Positions 7,772 through 49,708 of a stretch of DNA of 64,000 nucleotides are shown here, one piece after another. The position numbers and the translations under genes were made by a program. This stretch comes from Styela clava (lineage: Eukaryota). Every line of letters begins with the position of its first letter. Positions within the stretch are counted from its first letter, which is position 1. The notes under the pieces were generated by a model that worked only from the letters and a program-made list of their open reading frames with translations, was not told the DNA's origin and ran no database searches. The stretch is from the NCBI RefSeq assembly GCF_964204865.1, contig NC_135260.1, forward strand, positions 6,944,001 to 7,008,000. The letters run 5' to 3'.

Positions 7772-7900
7772 TTCCCGAAGTATGTGAACCAAGATAGTAA
7801 CCGACACCCGGGACACCCGAAAGTAATATGCGTACCAGGTTAAGGTTAGGCCAGAATTTTATTCCAATTTTCCTTATTTTAGTTCTATTACGAGTTACGA
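7772..7900. mobile_element. Truncated half copy of the Merlin-like MITE family
   Basis: TCCCGAAGTATGTGAACCAAGAT...GGTTAAGGTTAGGCC...TTTTAGTTCTATT matches the left half of 17012-17247. Confidence 0.8.
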
Positions 7901-9339
7901 CTTTTTTAAAAGTGTCGCTGCTCGACAAACAGTATTGGTTTTCCGCGTCTCCGTCGTGAAATGCAGTTTTTAATGAACTATTTATTTGTAATTTATATGT
8001 CTGATGCGTATTTTCAGCGTGGTGAAAAAATAAACTACTGATTACTGACGGTAGACAACATTTTAGTATATTATTGTAGTAATGCTATCTCTATTCCCGT
8101 TTAATAATTTCAATATACCATCTGTTGTTTAGTTTTGCTTTCGAATAAGGAATATCGTAAAAGATCAGAAACAGTACACAAAATGTGCTAAGCAAAAAAT
8201 ATATTGCTTCACAATAGCAATACAAATGACAATTACATTGCTTAACAATGGTAATATTTAATAGAAATAATGTATTTCTATATAATGTTGTAAATAATGT
8301 ATATGTAATTTGCCATTAAATAACAAATCAAATCAAGATCTTATTAATTGCTAAACATTGCAACAAATACATCAAACATATTGGCATGATATGAAATAAT
8401 ATGTAAACTAATGTAAGAGGGTCAATTTCTAACGGAATGGAGTGATAAGTGATTCAAACGACTCTATCCGTGTGTATTCAATTAAGTACGGCAATTACGA
8501 AGATTTAATTGCTCCAAATCTTACAAATACTGTCACTGAAGACATAATTAACGTCTCTTCATTGTATAGAAATTGTAAGATTTTGATCGATCCTGTATTC
8601 AATCCTGTGTGTCGTCGTACAATACAACAATTTACAAGTCTTAAGAACGGGTTCTCTTATGTATCGAACTTGCTAACAGCAGGTTCCAACGTATGAATAT
8701 CACAAGTCAAGAACGGGTTCGCTGACTATCACGAATTTTATTTTCAAGAAAAGGCTAATTATCAAAGTAATGTTTAAATAAACTCTTGAGGATTTTACTA
8801 CCAGAAATATGTAACATTCCATAAACACGACATCATGTTTTCAGTTAAATTATTGAAAAATCCAAGACTGGGTATTTGCTAAAGTTTTAGCTCGAACTTT
8901 TAATTATTCGTATGTACGAGTTTAAAGTTTTGTCATCTTTGTCGCGATCGTGTCAAATTTGAATTACTGGACAAAAAATAAATTGGTCAAAGGTTGGGTT
9001 ACCAATTTGTGACCGAATTTCTTAGCAGAAGAAAATGAAATCTGATTCTGATATACTAATGCCTCTGATTTGAACAAGTTTTATTTTTTTTAAGATGTTT
9101 GCGCGATGGCCTATTGGCTAAAGCTTTAAGCTATGTATAGGACATAGAAAAGATTTTGCTATTTCACTGATATATAACAAACAGTTCGAAAAGTACTGAG
9201 TTCGGTCCAGGAACCTCAACAAGTTTTTTCCCCCAAGCAAACTGATATTCCCTTCTCGAAGTATCGAGAATATATAATTCTTGTTCGCTTCTTTCTTTTT
9301 AATCAAATGCACTGTTGCAGTTTAGTTAAAACGAGCGAA

Positions 9340-12300
9340 ACAAAGTAACATAAAAAAAATAAATTATTACAAATATGAATCATCTATATGAACAAATGTT
9401 TCTACTTATGATTAGGCTTGGGCATTGGGTAATCATTAAAAAAGAGCAAAATTAATGAGAGTCATTAGGTTCAGTTAAATAAAGCGAATTATTTCATTTT
9501 TCCGAATTATTGATAATTTGAAGCTGCTCCTGCAAAGTTTTGGCGCGAGTCTTGCTAATGAGAACAATAGTTGCGGAAATGGAAATTCGCGGAACGTTTC
9601 AAGCAGTAGGCTACCCTACACTGATTTTTTTTTAAATATTCACAATTTGTGAGCTGTTTTTGCAAACACTCGGACCATTTTAATAATATAAAAAACGACT
9701 AGCTAGCAGAAACAATTGTTTTGGAGGTAAAAACTCGCGGAACGTTTCAACCAGTACTTTACACCGATTTTATTTCCTGAAACATTCATAAATTGTGAGC
9801 TTTTATGGAAAGACTCGACTTATTTTAGAAAATTGAAAACGACTAGCTATCGAGAACGAATGTTTTGGAGGTAAAAATTCACAGAACGTTTTTTGCAAAT
9901 ATTTCTGAATGCTTTTTAGTCGACTCTACTCCACATTGTAACTAGCAAAACGCTATCAACTACTATTAATAGTTACCTATTAGGTATAGTATAACTATTA
10001 TATAGTATGTACACAGTCATCTTTACTTGAATGGTCTTGACAGACAGCCCACTGATTATCTGGGGACATATTGTTGATATATTCAGGCCCGAGTCATTGC
10101 CTATAGCTAGGACTTTGTGCTATATTAAACATACTGAAAATAGGAATGTAACTAGTCTTTCGTGTTATATGAAATTGAAAGAGCAAGTTTCAGACTTCAT
10201 TAGTGATTGAATTCTAATTTAATTTTCACTATATTATTTCGAAATAGTTCTCATCTCATACCTACAAACATTTATAGATGGGTGGCGATAGCTAAAAAAA
10301 CAAGAATTTTTTTTCAAACGGGCTGCTATTGGGGTCTGAATTGCCCTTCGGTACCCCATTAATTTGATGCCCTGGACTAGTTCCTATTTTGCTTAATAGT
10401 TCAATTTATCTCTGGCTACAACATCCTTGCATTATTATACGTCTACAAATCTGTCAAACTAATACAGCAAGACTAGATAGAATCCCCTGCTGTAGCTCAA
10501 ACTAATACCCACAGTGAAATCAAATATTAAAAGTAATTAAACTGAAGCTTTATAACAGCATTGAGGAAATAAATGAATATAAATAGAAAACCTTGATATG
10601 AGCAAATGTTTCTATCTATTATTACTAAGCATGGGCATTTGGTAATCAATGAAAAAGGGCAAAATTAACGAGGGTCATTAGGTTGAGTTAAATAAAGAGA
10701 ATCTCCTATTTTATTTTCCGAAATATTCATAATGTGAAGCTGCTCTTGCAAAATTTTGGAGTGCGTCTAACTAACAAGAACAATGGTTGCGGAAATAGAA
10801 ATTCGTGGAACGTTTCAAGCAGTATTTAACAGTTAATTTTATTTCCTAAAAAAAAACATAATTTGAGGGCATGTTTTCGCAATGCCTCTCTATTGTAAAA
10901 TAAAACGGCTAACTAGCGAGAACAATCGTTTTATACAATAAATTCGCAGAACATTTTAAGCAGTTCTTTACACCTATTTTATTTTCTAAAACATTCATAA
11001 TTTGTGAGCTGTTTTTGCAAAGACTTGGGTCATTTTAGAAAATGGGAAACAACTAGCTAGCGAGAGCAATTATTTGGACGCAGAATTTTTTCGCAAATAT
11101 TTCTTAATGCTTGATAGTCGGCTCTACTCTACATTGTAACTAATGCACAGCAAAACGCTATTGTTCACGCAGTATGTATGTGTATACATTATTATATGGT
11201 ATATACACAGTCATATTTACTTGAATTGTCTTGATAGGCTGCCCACTGATTAGCTGAGGACATATTATTGATATAACCAAGCCCGGATCATTGTCTCTAG
11301 GACTTTGGTGTCCTATATATAAAACATAGTAATATTAGGAATGTAACTATTGTTCCGTTGAAAAAGCAAGTTTAAGACTTCATTACTGATTGGAGGCTAA
11401 TTTAGTTTACATGAATACAAATCTGTCAAATTAATAGATCAAGTCTAGATCTCGCGTTGTAGCTCAAACTAATACTTTCAGTGAAATCGAATATTAACGG
11501 TATTGAAACTACGGTGAAATACTATTTAGGCGTTTGGCGACTGACGGGATTCAACAGTTTTGAAAAAATGAACAATTATTAATAAAAAACCCCAATTAAT
11601 ATTATTAAGCTTGGGCATTGATCAATCATTGGAAAGGGGGGAAATTGATGTGGGTCATTAGGTTTAAATAAAGAGAATCTCCTATTTAATTTTCCCAAAT
11701 ATTCATAATGTGAAGCTGCTCTTGCAAAATTTTGGCTCGAATCTAGCTAACGAGAACAACATTTGAGGAAATAGACATTCGCGGAACGTTTCAAACAGTA
11801 CTTACACATAATTCCATTTCCTAACTAATCATAATTTGGGGCATGTTTTCGGAATGCCTTGACTAATTGAAAAATAAAAACGACTAGCTAGCGAGAATAA
11901 TCATTTTGTTAATAGAAATTCGCAGAAAATTTTAAGCAGTTCTTCACACTTATTTTATTTTCCAAAAGATTCATAAATTGTGAGCTGTTTTTAAAAAAAC
12001 GGATTATTTTAGAAATTGGAAACGACTAGCTAGAGAGAGCAGTTGTTTTGGAGGTCGAAATTCGCGCAACGTTTCAAGCAGTACTTAACACAAAACTTGA
12101 TTTCCTAAAATAGTCATAATTTAGGGGCGTGTTTTCGCAATGCCTCGACTAATTTTGGAAAATAAAAACGGTTAGCTAGCGAAAACAATCATTTTGTTAA
12201 TAGAAATTCGCAGAAAATTTTTGCAATTTTTTACACTTAATTCATTTTCCAAAACATTCATAAGTTGGCTGCTTTTTTTGCAAAATCTCGGTTTATTTTA

Positions 12301-12545
12301 AAAAATGGGAAACGACTAGCTTGCGAGAATAATAATATTGAATTAGAAATACGCAGAACTTTTTTCGCAAATATTTATGAATGCTTGAAAGTCGGCTTTC
12401 ATCTTCATTGCAACTAAAGCGCAGCAAAACGATATTAATTACACAGTATAGCCATCTTCACTTGAATGGTCATGATAGACTGTCCACTGATCAGCTGGGC
12501 ACTTATTGTTGAAAATTGTTGATATAACCAAGCCCGGGTCATTTC
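9340..12545. repeat. Hierarchical tandem array: three ~1.0-1.2 kb units, each with 3, 3 or 5 copies of a ~145-bp monomer
   Basis: Unit marker GCWTGGGCATT at ~9417, ~10629, ~11609. Monomer marker CTAGCTAGCGAGAAC-like at 9551, 9697, 9840; 10767, 10906, 11050; 11741, 11881, 12023, 12168, 12313. Confidence 0.9.
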
Positions 12546-14354
12546 TTTCTTTTTTCTTTCAGTTTGTTGCGTAGCTTCGTTATGTAGCTTAAATTGTAAA
12601 GTGTAAATTTGCCGCCACTTGTGAATAAATGGCGACGTTATTCTTGCAAAAAGCGTAACATTGTAAGGCTAATTGATGTAGTAATTTGAACTTCGTGCTT
12701 ATAAAATGATGTATTTTGTCAAGCGTGAGTGCCTCCGTCTTACTAGCCCGTCGGTTTGTTCTGCGAACCTGATGCTCGACCGGTCGTTGTTACCAATGTG
12801 GATGCAACATGTCATGTCCGTCAGTCTCAAAGGTCAAAGTTTATAGAATTCAAATCAGACTAATGCAATAAAATTCATACGCGATCATGACAGCGGAAAA
12901 ATACATGATCCGCAGGCAACATTGCCTCATTTTGCCGTTTTTATCCAATTCAAGCGATATTTCTTGAATAAAATACGACATACATTATTTATTTCTATTT
13001 CTATAGCAAGCATAAAAATGATAAGTACTTAACAAATATCGCACTGAGTAGACTTGACGTCACATAGACCCGATAAATGTCTCACTCCAGTGTTGCACAC
13101 TTATAATATATCAGATATATTAAACAAACACCACATTTGTCATTAGAACCAAAGCATATTCAAAAAGGGCGCTGAAAATATGATAATTTCATCGCAAAGC
13201 AGGTTCCTTTGCCGCAGTTTTTTGACTTTTGTACCTATATAGTTGATCATTGCTTTCTCTTGTTTATAATAGCATGGCAAGTAGAATAAAGTTAAATGTC
13301 AAATCTACTAATCTAGTTCAAATCATCAAAATATTATTCTTTCCTATTCATTACTACTTTGGATTAAATGAAAAATAATTATTTTTACAACTTATAAGCA
13401 ACGAAAAATTGATTATAATTATATGCTTATATTTTTGATGCCATGGATCTTGTAAATATTGTTTGAAAATTAATTAAATACAATTACAACGATTTGTAGT
13501 TGTGAGCAGTACAAAAGCAGTATTTTAGGCAGTACAGAAAAAATTAAGCAAATCGAAGTCGATACTGTCGATGTTTAATAAATTGAGTACGATAATCGAA
13601 GTACTTCTTCCTTGAGAACTTGACTTCCATATGCGTTGTGTACACACATATTTTCTGACAACAGTACTTGCTACCCTTGTTTGTCGATAAACATTAAAGT
13701 GAAAGAACACAAACTAATTGCTATCTCTGCAAAGATATAGAGCCATTATGTCGTCCTCGTGTTTATAAAAGTGTCAACCGTATCTATTTATCAAAGAAAA
13801 TATAGCTTAACTGTGTTTTGAGGATGACACATTAAACTATGAAGCAGTTTGACTTTAAAATGACAGCGTAGCGACGTTGTGCGATTTTTGTCGAAGAATT
13901 TAAATCAGGTGTTTGGAATTTTTATGGTTTTAGGTCATTAAGTTATTTAATAAATATTTAACCTCATGCCTATAAAGTTTTTTGCTAGCCATTAATTAGA
14001 AAATAATTTTCAATCTAGATTATCCCATATTGGTTTGCATCTTATCCAGAGTGTATGGATACATTTTTAAAAGTGTTTGACGAATATTAATTAAACGATG
14101 CAACTGCTGACATTTCATAATATTTTCCAAGTGTGGTTTATTCGTACCAACGTCTAGTACGATAAAATAATACAGGCCATTTTTTAAAGTGTGAATGATA
14201 AGCATACGTTGATATTTTTTGTGATGTTTGGTGTGATTTTCACTATTTGTATTTTGGACGAGTTTTATAATATGCTAATGTATTAATATTTAAAAATAGC
14301 ATTTGGGCATAGGCTAACTTGACGTCAGTGATCATAAACAAACAAGAAGAAAAT

Positions 14355-15749
14355 ATGAATTTTGAGATCGAGCAGGGTTCATTTAAAGAAATCAAAAGTA
14401 GATGGGAGCAAAAAGGGGAGAATAATTCATACGGCAATAATTCGCCGTCTGCAACTAAAATCGAAACGAGAGAGCAAAAACTCAAACGTTGGGCAGAATC
14501 GGAGAGAAGATATTGGGAAATGCAAAAGGCTAATAAAGAACAAAAATATCAAGATAAAATAACTATGGCGGAACGAAGGAAAACGATAAAAGAAGAGGTT
14601 GCCCGAAAGGCTGATGATGCTTCTGATAAAAAAGAAAATTTACGTGAAAACGAAAGGCAACAGGAGAAACTAACACGATGGGCAGCATCGGAGCAGAGAT
14701 ATTGGGAGGAACGAAAAGCTGCTCAAGCGCAGCGATATCGGGAAAGAAGACATCTAGAAGAACTTCGGAGAGGTGAAGAAAATGAAACAGATGATATTAC
14801 AGAAATACAAAAAGCTATAGAATATGACGTCGTACCGGAGACCAATGAGGTCAATGATCAGACGGAAAATAAAATACTAGATAAAAACGAAAATCAACAG
14901 GACAAAATTAAACGATGGGCAGCGTCGGAGCAGAGATATTGGGAGGAACGAAGAGCTGCTCAAGAACAGCGATATCAAGAAAAAAGATATATAGCAGAAC
15001 TCCAAAGAGCCGAAGAAGAGCAGCAGTATCAAGCTAGATATCAAGAAGAGCTTCGAAAAGCCGAAGAAGAGCAGCGAGTTCGAGACCAAATACGTCAAGA
15101 AGAGCTTCGAAAAGCTGAAGAAGAACAGCGAGTTCGAGAACAAAGACGTCAAGAAGAGCTTCAAAAGGCTGAAGAAGAGAAGCGCTATCAGGAAGCAATA
15201 CGTTTAGGAAAGCTTCGAAAAGCAGAAGATGACAAGCGCTATCAGGAGGAAATACGTCTGAACGAACTTCGAAGAGCTGAACAGGAGAAGCGATATCTGG
15301 AAAATAGACGTCGAGAACAACTTCGAAAATTTGCAGAAACGCAGCGAAATCAGAAAAGAAAGAATCCTGGAAAATGTATCCAGAAACACAAAGTTCTAAC
15401 AAAGAACAATAATGATATTGACTTTGACAACGTAATCAATGCTTTCCGTGGCAATGAGGAAAATTCCGCATCACAGAATGGATTTTCAGAAATTAATACG
15501 CATGGTGAAATTGCCGCTGGCGTCACTGGTGCCACGGAAACGTATCATGAAATTGCTGCTGGCGTCACTGGTGCCTCGCAAACGTATCATGAAATTGCTA
15601 CTGGCGTCACTGGTGCCACGCAAACGTATCATGAAATTGCTGCTGGCGTCACTGATGCCACGCAAACGTATCATGAAATTGCTGCTGGCGTCACTGGTTC
15701 CACGGAAACATATAGTGCAATGGAAGCTGTGGGATGCGTGGTATCTTAA
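14355..15749 (+). CDS. Intronless orphan protein, 464 aa: E/R/K/Q-rich helical repeats, 14-aa C-terminal repeats, terminal CaaX (CVVS)
   Basis: 1.4-kb uninterrupted ORF in AT-rich DNA. First ATG at 14355 (the track start 14319 is TTG). AATAAA at 15856 and 15928. No family recognised. Confidence 0.8.
   Translation: MNFEIEQGSFKEIKSRWEQKGENNSYGNNSPSATKIETREQKLKRWAESERRYWEMQKANKEQKYQDKITMAERRKTIKEEVARKADDASDKKENLRENERQQEKLTRWAASEQRYWEERKAAQAQRYRERRHLEELRRGEENETDDITEIQKAIEYDVVPETNEVNDQTENKILDKNENQQDKIKRWAASEQRYWEERRAAQEQRYQEKRYIAELQRAEEEQQYQARYQEELRKAEEEQRVRDQIRQEELRKAEEEQRVREQRRQEELQKAEEEKRYQEAIRLGKLRKAEDDKRYQEEIRLNELRRAEQEKRYLENRRREQLRKFAETQRNQKRKNPGKCIQKHKVLTKNNNDIDFDNVINAFRGNEENSASQNGFSEINTHGEIAAGVTGATETYHEIAAGVTGASQTYHEIATGVTGATQTYHEIAAGVTDATQTYHEIAAGVTGSTETYSAMEAVGCVVS
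15507..15713 (+). repeat. Coding minisatellite, five 42-nt units (EIAAGVTGATQTYH)
   Basis: Units start at 15507, 15549, 15591, 15633, 15675. Confidence 0.95.
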
Positions 15750-17011
15750 AGTAATCATAAACAGAGCTGAGCTTAAAGCACGAACATTTGTAGATTAGAC
15801 TTTACCTAGGAACACATGTTCCCTTTAATTCGATTAGTCCAGAGATTTGTATACAATAAAGTGATGTTTATTATATCATCAGTGGCAGTGGCAGTTTTCA
15901 GTTCAGTTCCTACGTGTTACAATTAACAATAAACTGTATTTGTAAGATTTGAAGCAATTACATCTTCGTAATTCCCGTACTTAATTGAATACACACGGAT
16001 AGAGTCGTTTGAATCACTTATCCCTCCGTTTTGTTAGAAATTGACCATTCTACATTAGTTTACAAATTATTTCACATCATGCCAATCTTTTTGATGTATT
16101 TGTTGCAATGTTTAGCATTTAACAAGATCTTGATTTGATTTTGTTATCCAATGGCAATACATTATTTCTATGAAATATTAAATAAGCAATGTAATTGTCA
16201 TTTGTATTGTTATTGTGAAGCAATATAAATTTTTTGCTTAGCACATTTTGTGTACTGTTTCTAATCTTTTACGATATTCCATATTCGAAAGCAAAACTAA
16301 ACAACAGTTTGATATTGAAATTTTTAAACGGGAATAGAGATAGCATTACTACAATATTATACCAAAATGTTGTCTACCGTCGGTAATCAGTAGTTTATTT
16401 TTTCACCACGCTGAAAATACGTTTCAGACATATAAATTACAATTAGTTTATTAAAAACCGCATTTCACGATGGAGACGCGGAAAATCAATACTGTTTATC
16501 GAGCAGCGACACTTTTAAAAAATTCTAACAGGAAATAATAGAAAAAGGTCGAGATGTATATGTTAAATAAAATAAGCACTAAATACTTCAACGCGACTTG
16601 GTATAACTAGATGAGGCAATCACCGACAATCTAAGTAGTAACCCTGGAGATAACAGTTCTGAGGCAGGTTCACAATCATACCATTGTGAGGTAACTAGGT
16701 CTCTTAGAGAATAATAAAATAATATTGCACGTTAGAGTGGGTGGCTCAGGCCAAGATGTGCAAATATTGTGGTAAACGAAAGCTGTGACAGCATTCTTCG
16801 TATACATGATTCGTGGGGAGCGTAACTGACGTATAAACAGCGTACATAAAAGGAAAAACGGCGCAGTTTGGCTTTTTCCAATTGTCAGTCAGAAGACTCC
16901 AAGAATCGAACTAGATGCAGGATCGGCCGTGGTTATCACTTCCAGGAATATATGACTCATGTTTGTCTCATTTCGGTTTGTATATTGCAAAATTTTTTTA
17001 CAAAACAAATT

Positions 17012-17247
17012 GGTGCTCCCGAAGTATGTGAACCAAGATGGCGGGCACCGAAACGTAGCATGTGTACCAGGTTAGAGTTAGGCTATAATTTTATTCCAAT
17101 TTTTCTTATTTTAGTTCTATTACAAATTCGGTGACTAGCCAAGTGACTCCCGTAGTATCTGTACCTGAAATTATGGCCTAACCCTAACCTGGTACACATA
17201 CTACGTTCTGGTGTCCGCCATCTTGGTTCACATACTTCGGGAGCACC
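17012..17247. mobile_element. Merlin-like MITE with ~75-bp TIRs
   Basis: GGTGCTCCCGAAGTATGTGAACCAAGATGGCGG...CCGCCATCTTGGTTCACATACTTCGGGAGCACC; absent at the equivalent site of the left arm. Confidence 0.9.
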
Positions 17248-17297
17248 AAAGAAAAATTCTTTGAGAAAGCCGCAAATCGTGAATTGAATATTTTATT

Positions 17298-18115
17298 TGT
17301 CGGCAGTCTGTGCGGTCTTAAGTTTTAGTTTAGTTCGGGTTCCTTCTATTGTATATCGTCATCGTGATGATTACCGCTGTTTCGTCGTCGTCATCATTAC
17401 TGTGTTGCTTTTCTTGCATCCGACGTGTCGCCTTTGTTGTCTTTCACGTGTCATCGTTTTACGTATTGAGTTTACACCATCATCCCTCTAAGCTCGGTGA
17501 GATTTTAGGATTGCATTTCTGGTGGTAGCAGTTCAGGATTTCATTTCTTGTTATGGCAGTTTAAGATAGCGTTGAGGTTTGAATTCATTTATTAGTCTCC
17601 ATTTATACTGTATTTCGAATTGTTCGATATAACAATATGATATTTGCATGTCTACAGCTCGTATTGTATTGCATTTATAGTTACTGTTTTACCTTGGTTG
17701 TATATCTGTCGTTTTGGGACTATTCTGTTATATGGAGTTGTTTTGTGTGAGTATTAGTTTTGGTGCTCCCGAAGTATGCGAACCAAGATGGCGAACATCG
17801 GAACGTAACATGGGTAACAGGTTAGGGTTAGGCGATAATTTCTTTCCAATTTCCCTTATTTTAGTCCTATTATCAGTTCGAAGACTAGCCAAGAGCCTCC
17901 CGTAGTATTTATACCTAAAATTATGGCCTAACCCTAACCTATACACATGTTACATTCCGATGTCCGCCATCTTGGTTCGCATACTTCGGGAGCCCCTTAG
18001 TTTTATATTCTGTATCATTTGTCTTTGATTTATTTGATGCTATTCATTTCACTTGTATTTTAGTCAACCGTTTTGAATATTCTTAATAAAATAAGTCTGG
18101 AAAAGCGACTTAACA
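17298..18115 (+). mobile_element. Candidate solo LTR (~575 bp once the nested MITE is removed)
   Basis: Insertion absent from the left arm; TGT...ACA termini; AATAAA at 18085, ~25 bp before the end; no clean TSD. Confidence 0.45.
17762..17996. mobile_element. Merlin-like MITE nested in the candidate LTR
   Basis: Same TIRs as 17012; perfect 8-bp TSD TTAGTTTT (17754-17761 / 17997-18004). GG termini plus an 8-bp TSD fit Merlin. Confidence 0.92.
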
Positions 18116-21900: not shown

Positions 21901-24682
21901 AAATAAACTAGATTGTGCGGCGCTAAGTCAGTTCTGCGGTTCGTCACCGCTGTCACATGGCGAACGCTTGAAAATAGAGGATTGTTTTTACTAAAATAAA
22001 GCAATAAAACGTCTCTCCAAATGAGGAGTTACTTGACGCGAGCTTAAAGCACGAAGTTTAGATAAAAAGCACGATTGGATTGGTTCTGCACAAGACAATT
22101 CATTCTCCTTCTACTTATCACAGGACGTCATTTTCATATTGGCACCGTCTTGACGTTTATAGATACAACATTAACCGTGATCTAAAATAACTAAAAAATG
22201 CTCTGCCAATGAATATAAATATCTGCCAATGGTTTAGTGCACGCTAAAATTGTTCTGCGGGCGCGGTTCGGACCACCCTGATTTAATCCTATGAGAACCG
22301 ACAGGCGAACAAAGACTGCCGAATGATTTAAGTTTGTAAGCTTACTAAATAAACAAACCACAAATAAAATAATCTGCAAAGTAGGAGTGAAAGAAATAAT
22401 TTATTTTTGATTTGGCCTTCATACATTTGCGACGAAATATTGAAGTTTAGTCAAATGGAACATTTTAGCGTAAGATAATTTCATACCTCCAATCCTTTCA
22501 TATGATGACGAAACTCCGGGCATATGAAGCTGCATCCGCCATAGGCGGCATCGACATGCAACCAGGTTATATCTTCTGCTTGACCCGAAATGTTATGAAA
22601 ATGCTTTTTTTTTAAGCTTGTTTTATATAGCAATATTATCCCTTTCAATGATTTCAAACTTAAATAAACTTGTTGGTATACATCAAATGACGCGAGTGAG
22701 ACCACTGAAACAAGATAGTTCTCCTTCAGAAGGGTTCCAAGACTCTGAATATCTGACGAAACTCTGTGTCTGTTTATTCATTATTGTTTGCTTACAATCC
22801 GTTATATATATATTCAAACTCGTTTTGTCCTTTCATGACATATGGCTACAAAGAAATATATTATGACATAACAACTGAATAAAATATCGACAATTTTGGT
22901 CGGCACACGGAAGAATTTTGTCAATAAATTTAGCCGATTTTGGCACGCGAGTTGAAAAAGGTTGCCCACCCTTATTATAGTTAATTTCATGTTTGAAAAA
23001 AATATTCCCATACCTCTTATATATTAAAAAAGATTTTAAATACTGTGAACCAAATGTGACGAAGAAAATAAATTTCTTACAAACTTGTCCGATTTCTTCA
23101 AGATGGTCGAATGAAACACGTGACGTTGTTCCCAGGGTTGCACACACCTTAAAAATATTTGTTTATTTGTTTTATAAATTGTTACAACAAAACGGATTTT
23201 AATATCAGAAAAACAGATTTGTTTATAAAAACCTATTCTCTTTTGCACATTTGTTTTGCCCATTTCACCGCACATGTATGTTAATAAAAAGGTAATAAAA
23301 ATTTGCAAAAACACGTTAAAGACTTAAAATTAGCATAGGAATGTTTAATTTGTTAGTAGAATATCTCCCACATAAAACGGAATTTTTCCTGCATTCCTAT
23401 CTTCTGTTATTGCACGTTGCAAGTTATCACCACGCATAGACACGTTTTTATCCACTGGTATTTTATGAAGTTGTGTGAATCTCAATAAACCTATATAAAT
23501 TAGAAACAAATTTGATTCATGATGTTGAATATTTTAGTGTTTTACTTTTCAATAAATATTTCAATTTGAAATCGCTACTCACAAGCTCTCTCGACTGAAG
23601 AATGACTGTATTCTGAAGTGTATGCAACTAATTTTGATGCAAGTTCGTATTCAGAAACATCAGGATATTTTAAGCTAAGTGTCTTCAGTGCATTACTTTT
23701 TGCAGACAACAACGTCATCAATGTGCCTTCACTGCAAGATCCTGTAAAATTTGATATCAAATCAGCACACAATAGTTAAATATTTTTCATACTGTATGAA
23801 ATATATATAGCGATTGATACTGATAAAGTTTTTCTTAAAATTTAAAGTTTGACGTTTTTTTATTTATATATTTATTATAATATGTAATATGTTTAAATAA
23901 AGAATTGAGTACACAAAAATAATATTTTCATTTTACCTAGAATCACTCCGCACCCAGGACCAACACCTTCATGAAGAAAATCTTTAGGAAGATTCATAGC
24001 TTTAGCCAGCCAATCCAACATCAGGGTTTCCAGTTCTGCACAAGAAGGACTTGTTGCCTACAAGTAAAAAACTGAACTGACAATTTTGTTTTCGCCTATA
24101 TGATGTTTGTTTCACATCGTAATGAATTCTCAACTCCAAATTCAATATAATATAAATTCTCACTCAACTGAAAGTTAAACTTCCACAACCATCAATCAAC
24201 ATACTAGCTAAAGCAGAAGGATAGCTATTTGACGTTGGTAACTATGCGAAAAAATTGAAAGACCAATGTGTCATTTCTTTCATTATGATCTAGTCGAAAT
24301 CTTCAATCAAATCTTTCCATTTGCCGCCATGCTCTGGTGGATTACCAGGCAGAAGCTTTTTCAGGAAACCTAAAATGAAAAACACAGTTAAGTCGAATCA
24401 ACAATTCCTACTACACGTGAGAATACATATCACAACAAACCCCTAAATAATGAATCAAAGCAATTTAAGTAACTGCCCTGGTCGACATATACACATTTAA
24501 CTTTTCTTACCTGGCTTTACTGAAGGAAAAGCTTGTTTTCCTTCTAGATTTTGGTGATAATTTATTATATATTCCACGATTTCCTCGGCTGCATTTCAAG
24601 ACTCATTGTAATTCATTCCCATTCTTGCGAATCGTTCTGTTTCACCATTTGAATTTTCTGCATTTTGGCCATAACCAGTCAT
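18912..24682 (-). pseudogene. Full-length 11-exon aromatic-L-amino-acid decarboxylase (DDC/HDC/TDC family, PLP group II) pseudogene, copy A
   Basis: Exons 24511-24682, 24164-24369, 23937-24057, 23583-23741, 23372-23490, 23081-23147, 22487-22584, 21431-21498, 19902-19992, 19344-19565, 18912-19103 splice in frame. Motifs [43 protein letters not shown]. In-frame stops at 24596-24598, 24290-24292, 24242-24244, 24164-24166; exon-7 acceptor AG>GG. Confidence 0.95.
20422..21346 (-). mobile_element. Non-autonomous hAT element in intron 8 (same insertion as 4652-5637)
   Basis: TIRs CAGTATTTCCCAAA / TTTAGGAACCGCTG; perfect 8-bp TSD ATCTATGC on both sides. Confidence 0.9.
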
Positions 24683-46733: not shown

Positions 46734-49583
46734 CTGCAAAATAAAGTAAAAAATTATTAAAATCATTTCAAATGTTGAGTTACTAAAAAATGCCATGTGA
46801 AATTTAAAAAAAATGTATATATCTTATCGTATTTATCGCAAAGGTTTCCGATAAATATGTAGAGATTAAATATAGATTATGTGATTATGATTCAATATTC
46901 GTATACTTAGCAAAATAAAATATTAATTATTAGTATATTTTTTTCATTAATCTTTGAACAATACTGGGCGTTGCTTATTCTATAAATTTATTTATTTTGA
47001 AAAATACATTGGGGTTTATCATCTGTTCTGTGAGTGAAGTATATGTATCCTAAATTTGAGTAGCTTCTACTTTTATATTTTTTTTATAAACTATTATGTA
47101 AATATCAGAAACACGCTTCTGTACATAGGATTACTTTTTAAAATTATATTGCTTTTGACCCCGTATTTCTATTTTAAGCATTAACGGTAAGCAAGAACGG
47201 CGTGTTAATCAAGGTAATCAATGTTACGGATACGGTTTGCCTAATAAATCGTATAGTTTAGTGACTTTTACTTCACTTTTTATATTTTGACATGCGTGTT
47301 GTCTAGAGACTTTAGTGCGCATATCTCATTATCAACTCTGCTTGAGCAATTCACATATCTGATTCGATTTTACAACCTAAATCAACCTTAAAGCTTCAAT
47401 CAATAATATGAATGCCTGTATCGTTGTAAACATCGAAAATTTATCGATGGACGTCTGAATTATATATATATATATATAAACAGATAAGCTGGCATTTCGG
47501 TGTGCTAAACATCCTTAGTTTTGATAAACATTTTATTGACGAACCAAAGAACGTCAAAGTGCGCAACAATTACTATCAATGGTAATAAAGATCTAACATA
47601 ATCACATAAGCGTATCGCATATGTGCCATCGTAGCTTTTACTTAGCACGACATGCTTCTGACACGTTGAGTTAACGTCAAAATTTTTTTTATTTTTGCAG
47701 TTAAAAAAATCTTTTGCCATTTGTTTCCGTTTTCTCCTCTGCTAATGTAAATGCGAATATTAGAAATATAAATTCATTTTATTCACCTGTATGTGTTCTC
47801 ATATGAGCCTTCAAGTGTGAACTTTTATTATAAGTTTTGCCGCATCCCCCGTGTTCACAAACATGAATTGTAGCCTTCTTTCGTCTTGTTCCAGTTCTTC
47901 GTGGCTTTTTGGCAGCAGGTTTTGTGGATTTTAGATATGGAGGGAAATTTTGAAAACCATTTTGCTGGTTATAATATTGCGTTTGAAATGGAACCTGAAA
48001 TACATAAAATAAACAATTGAATGGTAAATTTATATCGTTCAAACATTAAACTTTGTTGCAATATTGAACTTCGCAAGATTTTCAACAACAGCAAATCCTA
48101 TTTTAGACAGCTAATTTAATTCAATTGTCATCGGAATTTGATAAATAGGGATTTCATTTTCTTCGAAATTACGAGACAGGTAAAATTGTTGTCTGTCTGT
48201 CACATGCATTTCGTCAGGTTCACGTTATTCTGGCGCGCGACAGAGTCGTTATTCTGTCACAAATGAATAAGCAGGTATTATAATCAGATTCGTAAAATTT
48301 TTATTTGATTTGTTTGTCGCCTTTAATTACTAGTTGTGTCGTCACAGATAGTTTCATTCGAGACAAAAAGAATATTTACCGACGTCATAATATCTACAAG
48401 AACAATACACACAGGATGTAATGAGCCATTTAAAGCGGTATTTAGAGATTTTACTGTCGCTTAGTAGATGCAATCTATAATTACATGTGACGCCTTGCTA
48501 CTGTGTCCACGCGAATACAATTTATGATACGACTACCCCCGAATGTTTCACAGAAAGTCTTCTTTGAATATATTAAATGGAAAGTGTATATCCCAAAAAC
48601 AAGTTTTAAATTAAAGTCCTGTTGAGATATGTCCATCGTTTAATGGTATTCGGAGAAATGCAAATATAATACTATTTTAAAAAAATCAGTCATTACTTGT
48701 TTTATAATTTTACCTTTTGTGTGAACACATCTGCATGTTGTGGATCAAAAATCATTCCATTGTGTTGATAGTTGTTGAACTGATGACTTTCATAATAATG
48801 TTGATGTTGTTGTTGAACGTCACAATGCGTATGTGAAAATTGATTTTGAAATCCGGAAGTAAAATTTGTGGTTACGGAAGCACACTTTGTAAAACTGGAT
48901 GACATATTTGACGTCACGGAATTCATTGGCATGTTTGGGGTGCATGTGTTGCCATTTGACGTAGCACCGACTGTAAACGACGGAACGTCACTCGGAGTAC
49001 GGTTGTACGCAACATTTTGTCTATTGAAAGTAGAGTTGAACATTTCATTTACCTGTACGTGGTTGGGTAATGAAGAGCAATATTCATATGGTGGGTTCGA
49101 TCCCTCAGTTGGTGAAATTGGTGGAGTTAGATCACCATTAGTGAAGTGATATACTCCTTGAACCATGTTATTTGGGACACATTGTTCCATGCGTGTGGGC
49201 GGCACTTGTAAAAATGACTGGTGTTGAACACATGGTAATTCATACTTAGGCCTCAGAGTAAACAAGGGACTTGCAGTCATTGCATCATCAATTGGCAATT
49301 CTGGAGAATTTGCAGTTGTAATCTCTTCCAAAATATCGAATCTGTCGGACTTGTTCGTAAATGTATTGCTATCATCTGAAAGCGGCGATAGAAGTTCTGC
49401 CACGAAACTTTCCGGAATTTGCGGGAGTTCGTCATTTTTATCTGTCGCAAATATTGGCGGTGATTCCCGGCATTCTTCTTCGTCCAGTATGAAGTCGAGA
49501 TAGTCTGAACCATCTGACAAAATATCAGACAAATCTGGAAGTGGTTCAAGTTTGGACAGCTGGTGAACAACGTCAAGCGTCAT
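46558..49583 (-). CDS. KLF1/2/4: Kruppel-like factor, KLF1/2/4 subgroup, 417 aa, three coding exons
   Basis: Exons 48714-49583, 47787-47994, 46558-46733 (1254 nt, GT-AG, in frame). Three C2H2 fingers: [81 protein letters not shown]. The GHRPF linker, LDFIL and LTPPxSP motifs are typical of KLF2/KLF4. Confidence 0.96.
47787..47994 (-). CDS. KLF1/2/4: KLF middle coding exon (basic NLS and zinc finger 1)
   Basis: TTTCAG acceptor, GTGAAT donor; [12 protein letters not shown] followed by finger 1. Confidence 0.96.
48714..49583 (-). CDS. KLF1/2/4: KLF first coding exon (activation region)
   Basis: CAAAAAATG start at 49583; donor AAG|GTAAAA at 48713; acidic N-terminus with DYLDFIL. Confidence 0.9.
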
Positions 49584-49708
49584 TTTTTGCTTGTTAGTGG
49601 TCTTCAAATCAGTATTTTTATAAAAGAAAAATCTACAAAAGTTAAAAACACAATATATTTTATTTCATAATATATATTCTCATCTTTTATATTTTACGTC
49701 ATACTCAC

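What the first reader, a model, noticed from the sequence alone, without database searches (positions are those of the whole stretch)
14355..15749. Orphan single-exon protein built like a membrane-tethered tyrosine-motif adaptor (helical rod + YHEI repeats + CaaX)
Seen: the only intact ORF in a 29-kb field of pseudogenes. It has three KLxRWAxSExRYWE repeats, a run of 18-aa E/R/K repeats, five 14-aa repeats carrying four YHEI motifs, and ends in GCVVS*. Established: C-aliphatic-aliphatic-Ser is a farnesyltransferase substrate, and YxxI is an SH2-docking pattern. Inference: a prenylated, membrane-proximal multi-phosphotyrosine scaffold on a long helical arm. Tyr spacing is 14 aa (YxxI-x10-YxxI), longer than a canonical ITAM. 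I recognise no family.
Basis: partly seen in the sequence, partly recalled or inferred. Interest (0 to 1): 0.8.

Follow-up and report, generated by a model that had tools for sequence, protein, structure and literature searches.

The report
Orphan sea-squirt helical protein with lipid tail
This is a real, apparently transcribed, single-exon gene seen so far only in this sea-squirt genome; it encodes a long, highly charged helical protein that ends in a lipid-attachment signal, and its proposed role as a phosphotyrosine signalling scaffold is possible but untested.

Summary
Window 14355-15749 (+) is an open 464-codon frame, by far the longest in 64 kb. It has every repeat and the GCVVS end as described.

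The gene looks transcribed and unspliced. Contigs of three RNA-like runs cover only about 14312-15997, not the flanks. They leave an unexplained in-frame hole at 15294-15542.

It is an orphan. Pfam, PDB, three word-index searches, a phmmer scan of 1.84 billion representatives, the ESM Atlas and Foldseek gave no real relative.

It is not a singleton. The genome holds three further copies, all damaged.

AlphaFold2 predicts two long helices. They are 51-54% charged and lack a heptad core, so they look like ER/K single alpha-helices rather than coiled coil.

A cysteine-bearing tail recurs in all three copies that reach the C-terminus: CVVS, CVVL and a Cys cluster.

T-Y-x-E-I occurs once in the most distant copy. 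A recent 42-bp tandem expansion gives four here. YHEI-x10-YHEI fits the broad ITAM consensus, but SH2 docking is only one of several readings.

Verdict: a real orphan gene, probably a lipid-tethered helical spacer. Interest is moderate.

The parts
14287..14298 (+). TATA-like box (TATTTAAAAATA), about 14-30 bases before the first bases of the RNA-like contigs
   Evidence: Read directly from the sequence. The contigs start at 14312, 14316 and 14329. The stretch is conserved in the C8 copy. Promoter function is inferred, not shown.
14312..15997 (+). Span covered by contigs of three RNA-like runs (the likely transcript), with a hole at 15294-15542
   Evidence: table 8. X1 covers 14329-15293 and 15543-15997. 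X2 covers 14316-15292, plus a weak piece at 14137-14294. X3 covers 14312-15206 and 15625-15847. Depth is zero at 12197-13969 in all three runs, while the DNA-like run X5 covers 30 of 30 bins. Contigs do not show strand.
14355..15749 (+). Coding sequence, 464 aa plus TAA stop, single exon
   Evidence: No joint inside it is listed. The in-frame TAG at 14310-14312 closes the frame upstream.
14469..14576 (+). Aromatic-face helix motif, unit 1 (aa 39-74; K-L-K-R-W-A-E-S-E-R-R-Y-W-E)
   Evidence: The profile of 5 units finds 8 places in the genome, all within the three gene copies.
14658..14765 (+). Aromatic-face helix motif, unit 2 (aa 102-137)
14895..15002 (+). Aromatic-face helix motif, unit 3 (aa 181-216)
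14865..15362 (+). Second long predicted helix (aa 171-336), highly charged and ER/K-type; it contains the 54-bp (18-aa) tandem array at about 15008-15329
   Evidence: AlphaFold2 helix H171-336 with block pLDDT mostly 88-93. The segment is 54% D/E/K/R and 13% LIVMFWC, with mean heptad a/d occupancy 0.26. The C8 copy lacks 222 bases of the array.
15414..15446 (+). Conserved short island D-I-D-F-D-N-V-I-N-A-F (aa 354-364) in the low-confidence tail
   Evidence: It is present as I-D-F-E-N-L-I-N in the C8 copy and as I-G-F-E-D-V-I-N in the L004 copy. It fits [WFY]xx[LIV].
15506..15713 (+). 42-bp (14-aa) tandem array of 5 units, with YHEI at nt 15543-15554, 15585-15596, 15627-15638 and 15669-15680
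   Evidence: TRF gives period 42, 5.0 copies, 93% matches. The C8 copy has one unit and no YHEI. The L004 copy has one in-register T-Y-E-E-I...T-G-A.
15735..15746 (+). C-terminal CVVS (CaaX-type farnesylation box), followed by TAA at 15747-15749
   Evidence: RNA-like contigs run colinear through it: X1 15669-15908 and X3 15667-15847, one differing letter each. The CVVS tetrapeptide was modified by human FTase in a yeast reporter (PMC11152559 passage).
15855..15860 (+). AATAAA polyadenylation-signal-like hexamer; a second one lies at 15928-15933
   Evidence: Read from the sequence. The RNA-like contigs end at 15847, 15908 and 15997. Function is inferred.

Best explanation
This is a real, transcribed, intronless gene found only in this sea-squirt genome. 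It is the one intact member of a four-locus family that is being born and lost.

The protein has no signal peptide and no membrane span, so it is cytosolic or nuclear. Its predicted anatomy, from N- to C-terminus, is:
1. Three copies of a conserved helix motif with an aromatic face (W, Y, W).
2. These sit within about 280 residues of very charged helix in two segments, roughly 17 and 25 nm long if straight. The helix has the make-up of an ER/K single alpha-helix, a stiff monomeric spacer, rather than a coiled coil.
3. A low-complexity tail carrying conserved short linear motifs: D-F-D-N-V-I-N, and T-Y-x-E-I multiplied to four copies by a recent 42-bp tandem duplication.
4. A CVVS box that farnesyltransferase should modify.

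The most likely way of working (inferred) is a lipid-tethered spacer or adaptor. The farnesylated C-terminus sits on the cytosolic face of a membrane. The YxxI motifs lie within about 70 residues of the anchor, where they can recruit a motif reader. The charged helix holds the N-terminal aromatic motifs tens of nanometres away.

Shown: the ORF, its repeats, the paralogues, the lack of relatives, and RNA-like coverage. Predicted: the helices. Inferred: farnesylation, membrane location, and any partner.
For: ORF reality:
- There are 476 open codons where chance gives about 7e-12 per window.
- The C8 sister copy, at dS 0.24, carries at least 3 stops and 5 frameshifting indels, while this copy carries none. 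The chance of all 8 falling on one named lineage is 0.004.

Transcription:
- In 3 of 3 RNA-like runs laid, contigs cover only about 14312-15997.
- The 2 kb upstream and about 0.9 kb downstream are empty apart from repeats, while the DNA-like run covers 30 of 30 bins.
- No joint is listed inside the gene.

Helices:
- AlphaFold2 predicts H39-155 and H171-336 at pLDDT about 85-93.
- They are 51-54% charged, with near-zero net charge, 13-15% hydrophobic residues and mean heptad occupancy 0.26-0.27.

No membrane span or signal peptide: the highest Kyte-Doolittle mean over 19 residues is 0.61, and the N-terminus is hydrophilic.

Lipid tail:
- CVVS fits the CaaX rule and was modified by human FTase in yeast (PMC11152559 passage).
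- The genome has ICMT and three prenyltransferase-beta loci.
- The sister copy ends in CVVL. The distant copy ends in F-C-C...C-C-V-V-C, a palmitoylation-type cluster. A cysteine lipidation tail is therefore the common theme.

Conserved islands: in an otherwise diverged tail, D/G-F-D/E-x-V/L-I-N, T-Y/H-x-E-I-x4-T-G-A and C-V-V are shared.

Orphan status.
Against: - Selection is weak. Omega is 0.59 against the L004 copy over 150 codons and 0.80 against the C8 pseudogene over 341 codons. Within the species, of the 13 listed differences inside the coding sequence, 9 change the protein and 4 do not, giving pN/pS of about 0.59. A further 23 differences across the laid stretch were not shown.
- Three of the four family loci are dead or damaged.
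- The runs are RNA only by the tool's guess, and contigs show neither strand nor ends.
- None of the three RNA-like runs covers 15294-15542 (codons 314-396). The DNA-like run covers it at half the neighbouring depth. The expressed form may therefore differ from the reference there.
- The CaaX box is not in the most distant copy, and the only other copy with one is a pseudogene.
- No polybasic stretch or second Cys lies near Cys461. From general knowledge of Ras-type targeting, farnesyl alone would then give only weak endomembrane binding.
- The structure comes from a single sequence (pTM 0.28), and the tail is low-confidence (pLDDT 43-66).
- No SAH predictor was run. The SAH call rests on my own composition and heptad counts.
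- Absence of relatives is weakened because the protein libraries do not hold even this protein itself (no self hit), and no tunicate genome could be searched.
Confidence: 0.55

Rival explanations
1. One reading: a farnesylated, membrane-proximal multi-phosphotyrosine scaffold. Src-type kinases would phosphorylate the four YHEI tyrosines, and SH2 proteins would dock on them. Single SH2 domains of the Src class could bind, or tandem-SH2 Syk-type kinases could bind across YxxI-x10-YxxI pairs.
For: - Three overlapping stretches fit the ITAM consensus YxxI/L-x(6-12)-YxxI/L (consensus from the PMC3634610 passage).
- The distant L004 copy has a single in-register T-Y-E-E-I. From memory, YEEI is the preferred Src-family SH2 ligand.
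- The genome has at least 50 SH2 matches, including two in one open frame.
- A Ciona SYK accession is listed in PMC13344425 (passage).
- A prenylated protein without a membrane span and with an ITAM-like motif has a precedent in RhoH (PMC8072805 passages).
Against: - The four motifs are one motif copied by a recent 42-bp expansion (93% matches).
- The nearest copy has T-H-G-E-I and no YHEI. Unit 1 of this gene also has H in place of Y.
- An acidic residue two before the Tyr is present in 1 of the 4 YHEI (T-E-T-Y); the other three have Q.
- The Y-E-E-I of L004 lies downstream of an in-frame TAG.
- There is no membrane-spanning receptor context.
- The YxxI pattern is short and is read by other machineries too.
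- Nothing here tests phosphorylation.
Confidence: 0.15
2. The YxxI and F-D-N-V motifs are read without phosphorylation. They could act as YxxPhi sorting signals for clathrin-adaptor mu subunits, or as LIR/AIM motifs ([W/F/Y]xx[L/I/V] after acidic or Thr residues) for ATG8-family proteins. The protein would then be a lipid-anchored trafficking or autophagy adaptor.
For: - Six [WFY]xx[LIV] matches lie in the tail: D-I-D-F-D-N-V, G-F-S-E-I and four T-Y-H-E-I.
- The F-D/E-x-V/L island is kept in all three copies that reach it.
- The motifs are close to the predicted lipid anchor.
- The motif definitions themselves are recalled, not taken from a call.
Against: - These are pattern matches only, of low specificity.
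- YxxPhi signals normally sit in tails of membrane-spanning proteins.
Confidence: 0.1
3. A young, fast-evolving gene with no specific motif-based function. The ORF survives and is transcribed, but the charged helix and the tail repeats are products of replication slippage. CaaX and YHEI would be incidental, and the family is decaying.
For: - Three of four loci are disabled.
- Omega is 0.59-0.80 and pN/pS is about 0.59.
- Both repeat arrays differ in copy number between copies.
- No relative outside this genome was found.
- The runs from the other listed studies, X9-X12, hold next to none of its words.
Against: - This copy has zero disabling lesions against at least 8 in its sister copy (P about 0.004).
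- Omega is below 1.
- The W-motif is almost invariant across 5 intact units, with 11 invariant columns of 36.
- Conserved islands persist in the tail.
- RNA-like coverage is seen in 3 of 3 runs laid.
Confidence: 0.15
4. A nuclear or cytoskeletal charged-helix protein. The ER/K helix itself would bind nucleic acid or microtubules, as reported for other SAH segments. The CaaX would serve nuclear-envelope or kinetochore-type targeting, as in lamins or Spindly.
For: - K-R-K and R-R-R clusters lie at aa 334, 318 and 74.
- SAH segments that bind microtubules (INCENP, PMC4571873 abstract) or DNA (CAF-1 KER, PMC10335832 abstract) are described (listing).
- Spindly is a farnesylated adaptor (PMC4436830 abstract).
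Against: - There is no sequence or fold similarity to any of these.
- The net charge of the helices is near zero (+4 and +5), unlike strongly basic nucleic-acid binders.
- The basic clusters are short.
Confidence: 0.05

Closest known systems
ER/K single alpha-helix (SAH) domains, as in myosin VI/X, INCENP, drebrin and the CAF-1 KER region
   Same: It has long predicted helices made mostly of E, R, K and Q, with few hydrophobic residues, many opposite-charge pairs at i/i+3 and i/i+4, and no heptad core. SAHs are described as stiff spacers between functional parts (abstracts of PMC5812594, PMC4183817, PMC5347031).
   Different: There is no sequence relationship. The array here is an 18-residue tandem repeat of recent origin whose copy number differs between gene copies. 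Monomeric state was not measured and no dedicated SAH predictor was run.
RhoH (atypical Rho GTPase with a CaaX box and an ITAM-like motif)
   Same: It is a protein without a membrane span that is prenylated at a C-terminal CaaX and carries an ITAM-like tyrosine pair that recruits ZAP-70/Syk (PMC8072805 passages).
   Different: RhoH is a GTPase-fold protein with YxxA-x6-YxxA inside the fold and a polybasic stretch next to CKIF. The protein here has no GTPase domain (Pfam negative). Its YxxI motifs lie in a repeat tail with x10 spacing, and no polybasic stretch sits next to CVVS.
Farnesylated helical or coiled-coil adaptors (Spindly, CENP-E/F, lamins) and paralemmin
   Same: They combine a long helical body with a C-terminal CaaX used for targeting. 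Sources seen: the Spindly abstract (PMC4436830) and the PALM2 abstract (PMC10393820), both as listings. Lamins and CENP-E/F are recalled.
   Different: There is no Pfam, PDB or fold match to any of them. The body here is SAH-like rather than a dimeric coiled coil. The family is confined to one genome.
Lipid-anchored or palmitoylated multi-tyrosine docking proteins (FRS2, LAT, PAG; recalled, from no call)
   Same: They place several tyrosine motifs close to a membrane anchor, where they serve as docking sites.
   Different: Those use N-myristoyl or a membrane span plus palmitoyl. None has a CaaX or a long charged helix. No homology is detectable here.
Another orphan family of this genome: single-exon helical proteins ending in a CCCC cluster
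   Same: The architecture is the same in outline: an intronless gene, a helical rod, and a C-terminal cysteine lipidation-type tail. The L004 copy of the present family also ends in a Cys cluster.
   Different: No detectable homology. Searches of the genome with this protein, its tail and its W-motif found only its own loci. I did not examine the other family myself.

Membership tests
CaaX farnesylated proteins | Cys at the fourth position from the C-terminus, an aliphatic residue at a2, and a last residue of S/M/Q/A/C for farnesyltransferase | tested here: met
   The protein ends ...G-C-V-V-S-stop. The rule itself is established knowledge, and is also described in PMC8072805.
CaaX farnesylated proteins | The tetrapeptide is accepted by farnesyltransferase | tested here: inconclusive
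   CVVS, taken there from HIV Nef, was modified by human FTase in a yeast reporter (PMC11152559 passage). This was not shown for this protein or for the ascidian enzyme.
CaaX farnesylated proteins | The CaaX is the true end of the expressed protein, with no splice replacing it | tested here: met
   RNA-like contigs X1 15669-15908 and X3 15667-15847 run colinear through the stop, and no joint is listed there. Contigs only, and the lists are truncated.
CaaX farnesylated proteins | Processing enzymes are present in the organism | tested here: met
   ICMT (PF04140) gave one match over the cut-off. Prenyltransferase beta (PF00432) matched at three loci.
CaaX farnesylated proteins | The CaaX is conserved in relatives | tested here: inconclusive
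   The C8 pseudogene has C-V-V-L-stop. The L004 copy has C-C-V-V-C-R-S-S-N-stop, which is not a CaaX. No orthologues were available.
ITAM-bearing signalling chains | YxxI/L-x(6-12)-YxxI/L | tested here: met
   Three overlapping matches begin at aa 397, 411 and 425. The consensus is as printed in PMC3634610. The narrower x6-8 form (recalled) is not met.
ITAM-bearing signalling chains | The motif lies in the cytoplasmic tail of a membrane-spanning receptor or adaptor chain | tested here: not met
   There is no hydrophobic span: the highest Kyte-Doolittle mean over 19 residues is 0.61. There is no signal peptide.
ITAM-bearing signalling chains | The tyrosines are phosphorylated and bound by tandem SH2 kinases | not testable with these tools
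   Only the presence of SH2 domains in the genome was shown.
ER/K single alpha-helix | A long helix rich in E/K/R, poor in hydrophobic residues, with no heptad core | tested here: met
   51-54% charged, 13-15% LIVMFWC, mean a/d occupancy 0.26-0.27 (maximum 0.5).
ER/K single alpha-helix | Monomeric and helical in solution | not testable with these tools
   This needs circular dichroism and SEC-MALS or analytical ultracentrifugation.
Canonical coiled coil | A heptad repeat with hydrophobic a/d positions | tested here: not met
   The best-register LIVMF occupancy of a/d in 28-residue windows has mean 0.26-0.27 and maximum 0.5. This is my own crude measure, not COILS or MARCOIL.
Any curated protein family (Pfam), including paralemmin, intermediate filament and trichohyalin-type entries | A match at or above the family's gathering score | tested here: not met
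   The only row at E up to 1 is PF13451, at 12.9 bits against a cut-off of 24.
LIR/AIM motif or YxxPhi sorting signal | A core pattern of [W/F/Y]xx[L/I/V] or YxxPhi | tested here: inconclusive
   The pattern is present six times in the tail.

The most novel reading that the evidence does not exclude
A membrane-span-free, farnesyl-anchored array of ITAM-type tyrosine motifs (three overlapping YxxI-x10-YxxI pairs) on a rigid single-alpha-helix stalk. In this reading, an invertebrate chordate built a lipid-tethered docking platform for Src- or Syk-type kinases from scratch. It would have done so by creating a CaaX box at the end of an older Cys-tailed protein and multiplying one T-Y-x-E-I motif by a 42-bp tandem duplication.
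Probability: 0.1. Interest if true: 0.7.

Novelty: new variant of a known kind. Interest (0 to 1): 0.33.

Why it matters
If the working model holds, this is a compact natural example of how a new signalling or tethering adaptor is assembled from generic parts. Those parts are a slippage-grown charged helix as a spacer, a short linear motif multiplied by tandem duplication, and a lipid anchor that changed type between paralogues (Cys cluster versus CaaX).

The family offers a dated series within one genome: one intact copy, one with a single stop, one heavily decayed and one fragment.

For ascidian biology it adds an expressed gene that the protein libraries searched here do not hold. If the gene proves functionless, it is simply one more repeat-rich orphan.

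Tried and rejected
- Homology. Pfam gave one sub-threshold row. Three word-index searches found nothing: whole protein, N-terminal 216 aa and C-terminal 135 aa. The phmmer scan of 1.84 billion representatives gave 10 hits at E up to 1e-3, the best 8.8e-9. I fetched 8 of the 10 (not P0004 or P0008). By inspection all 8 are unrelated tandem-repeat or charged-helix proteins, matching only the query's repeat regions.
- Other look-ups. The ESM Atlas gave a best score of 0.77 for the N-terminus and nothing usable for the tail. PDB by sequence and by the W-motif profile gave nothing. Foldseek against PDB gave a best E of 1.6, generic long helices only. I did not run the VIA-align libraries, because a model of two long helices plus a low-confidence tail cannot give a meaningful fold match.
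- Rfam on the window: 0 matches.
- Retrocopy origin is rejected. Homology with the C8 copy runs at least 1.5 kb upstream of the gene, so the copy was made at DNA level.
- A transposon-borne gene was considered. The flanks contain high-copy short elements, but the gene-proximal upstream DNA has only the family's own copies.
- A canonical intron at the coverage hole 15294-15542 is rejected. None of the five equivalent junction placements gives GT..AG, read from the sequence with edges.
- Upstream extension of the ORF by splicing was considered. The frame would stay open from an AG at 14311-14312, but the RNA-like contigs show no extra letters there. The 5' end remains unresolved between 14137 and 14329.
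- Species identity was not verified. 'Styela clava' comes only from earlier notes of this scan.
- Orthologues in other tunicates could not be sought, because no eukaryotic genome collection is on hand.
- Paper searches found no paper that links this organism to such a protein. The search for Styela clava with CaaX, farnesylated or prenylated listed none of 6 shown with the species term. The search for farnesylated, ITAM, adaptor and CaaX gave the RhoH precedent. These cover only the held library.
- Supplements were not consulted and are closed.
Full report
**What is there.** The frame from ATG 14355 to TAA 15747-15749 is open for 464 codons, or 476 from a TTG at 14319. An in-frame TAG sits at 14310-14312. 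It is the longest ORF of the 64-kb window. There are 8 ORFs of at least 110 aa, and the next is 301 aa. In 1-32000 the longest ORF that does not overlap it has 134 aa. With the window's 33% G+C, an open run of 476 codons is expected about 7e-12 times per window. The other five frames over the same span hold 10-42 stops.

- Three 36-residue units around K-L-x-R-W-A-x-S-E-x-R-Y-W-E.
- A 54-bp (18-aa) array with 5.2 copies.
- A 42-bp (14-aa) array with 5.0 copies at 93% matches.
- YHEI at aa 397, 411, 425 and 439.
- The end G-C-V-V-S.

**Is it expressed?** Four runs of one study hold 25-35% of the stretch's words. The tool guesses them to be RNA. Four runs of another study hold 76-82% and behave as DNA.

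I laid three of the first kind and one of the second on 12000-17900. The DNA-like run covers 30 of 30 bins. The three RNA-like runs cover only the gene:
- X1: 14329-15293 and 15543-15997.
- X2: 14316-15292, plus a weak piece at 14137-14294.
- X3: 14312-15206 and 15625-15847.

Depth in these three runs is zero from 12197 to 13969. It is zero again after 16137, apart from dispersed repeats. This is the pattern of a transcript, not of random genomic coverage, but the runs' nature is a guess and contigs show no strand.

No joint is listed inside the gene, and the contigs run colinear through the stop codon. The single-exon model and the C-terminus therefore stand. A TATA-like box at 14287-14298 lies 14-30 bases before the contig starts. 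AATAAA hexamers at 15855 and 15928 precede the contig ends. These regulatory readings are inferences.

Four further RNA-guessed runs of two other studies hold next to none of the words. That could mean restricted expression, but it is no proof of absence.

**An unexplained hole.** None of the three RNA-like runs covers 15294-15542. The DNA-like run has a contig there at depth 5, against about 10 beside it. The hole is exactly 249 bases, codons 314-396, so it is in frame, and both edges begin with TATC.

Exact 30-mer repeats in the reference explain contig breaks at 15538-15698 but not the break at 15293. No placement of the junction gives GT..AG, so a canonical intron is unlikely. The hole may be an alternative allele (an in-frame deletion or a diverged haplotype) or an assembly or filter gap. 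The tool warns that a hole proves nothing. Either way the YHEI units and CVVS stay in frame. I could not re-lay reads, because the one call was used.

**Relatives.** No real relative was found outside the genome:
- Pfam gave no hit at threshold.
- Three word-index searches found nothing.
- An exhaustive phmmer scan of 1.84 billion representatives gave 10 weak hits. The 8 that I fetched are unrelated repeat proteins aligned to the query's own repeats.
- The ESM Atlas, PDB by sequence and by profile, and Foldseek gave nothing significant.

The libraries lack even this protein itself, and no tunicate genomes could be searched. 'Orphan' therefore means 'no relative in what was searchable'.

Inside the genome (377 Mb, 380 contigs) there are three more loci:
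1. **C8:23824495-23825478 (minus strand).** It has the same architecture and is 82% identical in DNA. Homology runs at least 1.5 kb upstream, so it is a DNA-level duplicate and not a retrocopy. It has stops at the positions of W17, W109 and Q343, and another just before the Cys. It has five frameshifting indels. It lacks 222 bases of the 54-bp array and has only one 14-aa unit. It ends T-E-T-Y-S-A-M-E-A-V-stop-C-V-V-L-stop.
2. **C14:8125830-8126279 (plus strand, locus L004).** A 199-codon ORF carries an extra N-terminus and two W-motif units, then one in-frame TAG. The same frame then stays open for about 130 codons. These hold I-G-F-E-D-V-I-N, one T-D-T-Y-E-E-I-S-V-N-F-T-G-A, and the end Y-F-C-C-N-I-H-T-I-C-C-V-V-C-R-S-S-N. 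It has no ER/K array.
3. **C14:6888724-6889425.** This is a fragment with the promoter region and about the first 40 codons, frameshifted.

The W-motif profile finds 8 places in the genome, all in loci 1 and 2 and the window gene.

**Selection.**
- Against the C8 pseudogene: dS 0.24, dN 0.20, omega 0.80 over 341 codons.
- Against L004: dS 0.46, dN 0.27, omega 0.59 over 150 codons.
- Within the species, 13 listed differences between the RNA-like contigs and the reference fall inside the coding sequence. Nine change the protein and four do not, and none makes a stop, giving pN/pS of about 0.59. A further 23 differences across the laid stretch were not shown.

Constraint is therefore weak, but it is there. 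All of at least 8 disabling lesions since the split lie in the C8 copy and none in this one (P = 0.004 if both were free to decay). The W-motif has 11 invariant columns of 36 across five intact units.

**The protein.**
- Single-sequence AlphaFold2 gives mean pLDDT 73 and pTM 0.28. It predicts two long helices, 39-155 and 171-336, with block pLDDT about 85-93. The tail (337-464) is low-confidence, with pLDDT 43-66.
- The helices are 51-54% D/E/K/R, with net charge +4 and +5 and 13-15% LIVMFWC. The best-register heptad a/d occupancy is only 0.26-0.27 on average. That is the make-up described for ER/K single alpha-helices, which act as stiff spacers (abstracts listed), and not that of a coiled coil. 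At 0.15 nm per residue (textbook value) the two helices would span about 17 and 25 nm.
- The conserved W, A, S, E, Y, W and Y positions of the motif fall within about 160 degrees of a helical wheel, so they form one aromatic face. This suggests a binding surface. No known motif matched.
- There is no signal peptide and no hydrophobic span.

CVVS fits the CaaX rule. The same tetrapeptide was modified by human farnesyltransferase in a yeast reporter (PMC11152559, passage). The genome encodes ICMT and three prenyltransferase-beta loci.

Across the family the tail always carries cysteine next to V-V: CVVS here, CVVL in the pseudogene, and a palmitoylation-type Cys cluster in L004. I read this as a conserved lipid-anchoring tail whose chemistry changed when a stop codon arose four residues after the Cys in the ancestor of this copy and C8. 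That step is inference. Against strong membrane binding, no basic stretch and no second Cys lie near Cys461.

The YHEI motifs are not four independent events. They are one unit copied by a young array. Unit 1 here, and the only unit of C8, read T-H-G-E-I. However, L004 has an in-register T-Y-E-E-I...T-G-A. T-Y-x-E-I is therefore either ancestral or arose twice. Without an outgroup I cannot tell which.

YHEI-x10-YHEI fits the ITAM consensus as printed in PMC3634610. SH2 domains are plentiful in the genome, and a Ciona SYK is on record. RhoH shows that a prenylated protein without a membrane span can use an ITAM-like motif.

Even so, the same four letters also fit the YxxPhi sorting signal and the LIR core, both recalled definitions. 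So does the conserved F-D-N-V island. No tool here separates these readings.

I commit to a farnesyl-tethered single-alpha-helix spacer or adaptor with membrane-proximal short motifs (confidence 0.55). The rivals are the SH2/ITAM version (0.15), a non-phospho motif version (0.10), a decaying young gene without specific function (0.15) and a nuclear or cytoskeletal charged-helix protein (0.05).

It is a new, genome-restricted family built from known kinds of parts, so it is of moderate interest. Earlier notes of this scan call the organism Styela clava. They also describe another orphan family of helical proteins with Cys-cluster tails in the same genome.

Noticed in passing
window 15294-15542: None of the three RNA-like runs has a contig here, although both sides are covered at depth 6-10. 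The DNA-like run covers it at half the neighbouring depth. The gap is exactly 83 codons, in frame, and both edges begin with TATC. It may be an alternative allele or an assembly hole.
   Followed up: partly
window 7886-8533 (-) and 15933-16537 (+): The 3' flank of the gene has an inverted copy, about 650 bp at 86% identity, roughly 6 kb upstream of the gene. The pair brackets the upstream tandem array and the gene.
   Followed up: partly
window 14320-14327: A perfect palindromic cAMP-response-element-like octamer, TGACGTCA, sits right at the start of the RNA-like contigs. Its core ACGTCA is kept in the C8 and L004 copies.
   Followed up: no
window 16925-17318, 17713-17900 and about 16380-16547: These are very high-copy short dispersed elements. 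Summed contig depth reaches 1e4-1e5 in all four runs.
   Followed up: no
L004 1345-2331 (G000:C14:8125674-8126660): This paralogue has a single in-frame TAG at L004 1933-1935, yet about 130 further codons stay open in the same frame. The stop may be very recent or polymorphic. The copy has an extra 45-residue N-terminus, and the homologous DNA in the window gene serves as promoter and 5' leader.
   Followed up: partly
L016 3725-4425 (G000:C14:6888724-6889425): This is a fragmentary fourth copy, with the promoter region plus about the first 40 codons, frameshifted. It lies about 68 kb upstream of the gene on the same chromosome piece.
   Followed up: partly
window 14137-14294: One RNA-like run (X2) has a weak contig, depth 2.6, just upstream of the TATA-like box. 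It could be an upstream start, an outron or another transcript.
   Followed up: no
window 48702-49607 (-): The second-longest ORF of the window is 301 aa and rich in Ser, Thr, Asn and Pro. It has no Pfam match and may be a large exon of an unexamined gene.
   Followed up: no
window 22836-23147 (-): This ORF gives a sub-threshold match to the PLP-dependent decarboxylase domain, PF00282, E 1.4e-4, 21.2 bits against a cut-off of 27.
   Followed up: no
G000:C5:24186454-24187023 (-): Two SH2 domains lie in one 624-codon open frame, so this is a tandem-SH2 protein encoded without introns. I did not check whether it is of the Syk, SHP or p85 type.
   Followed up: no
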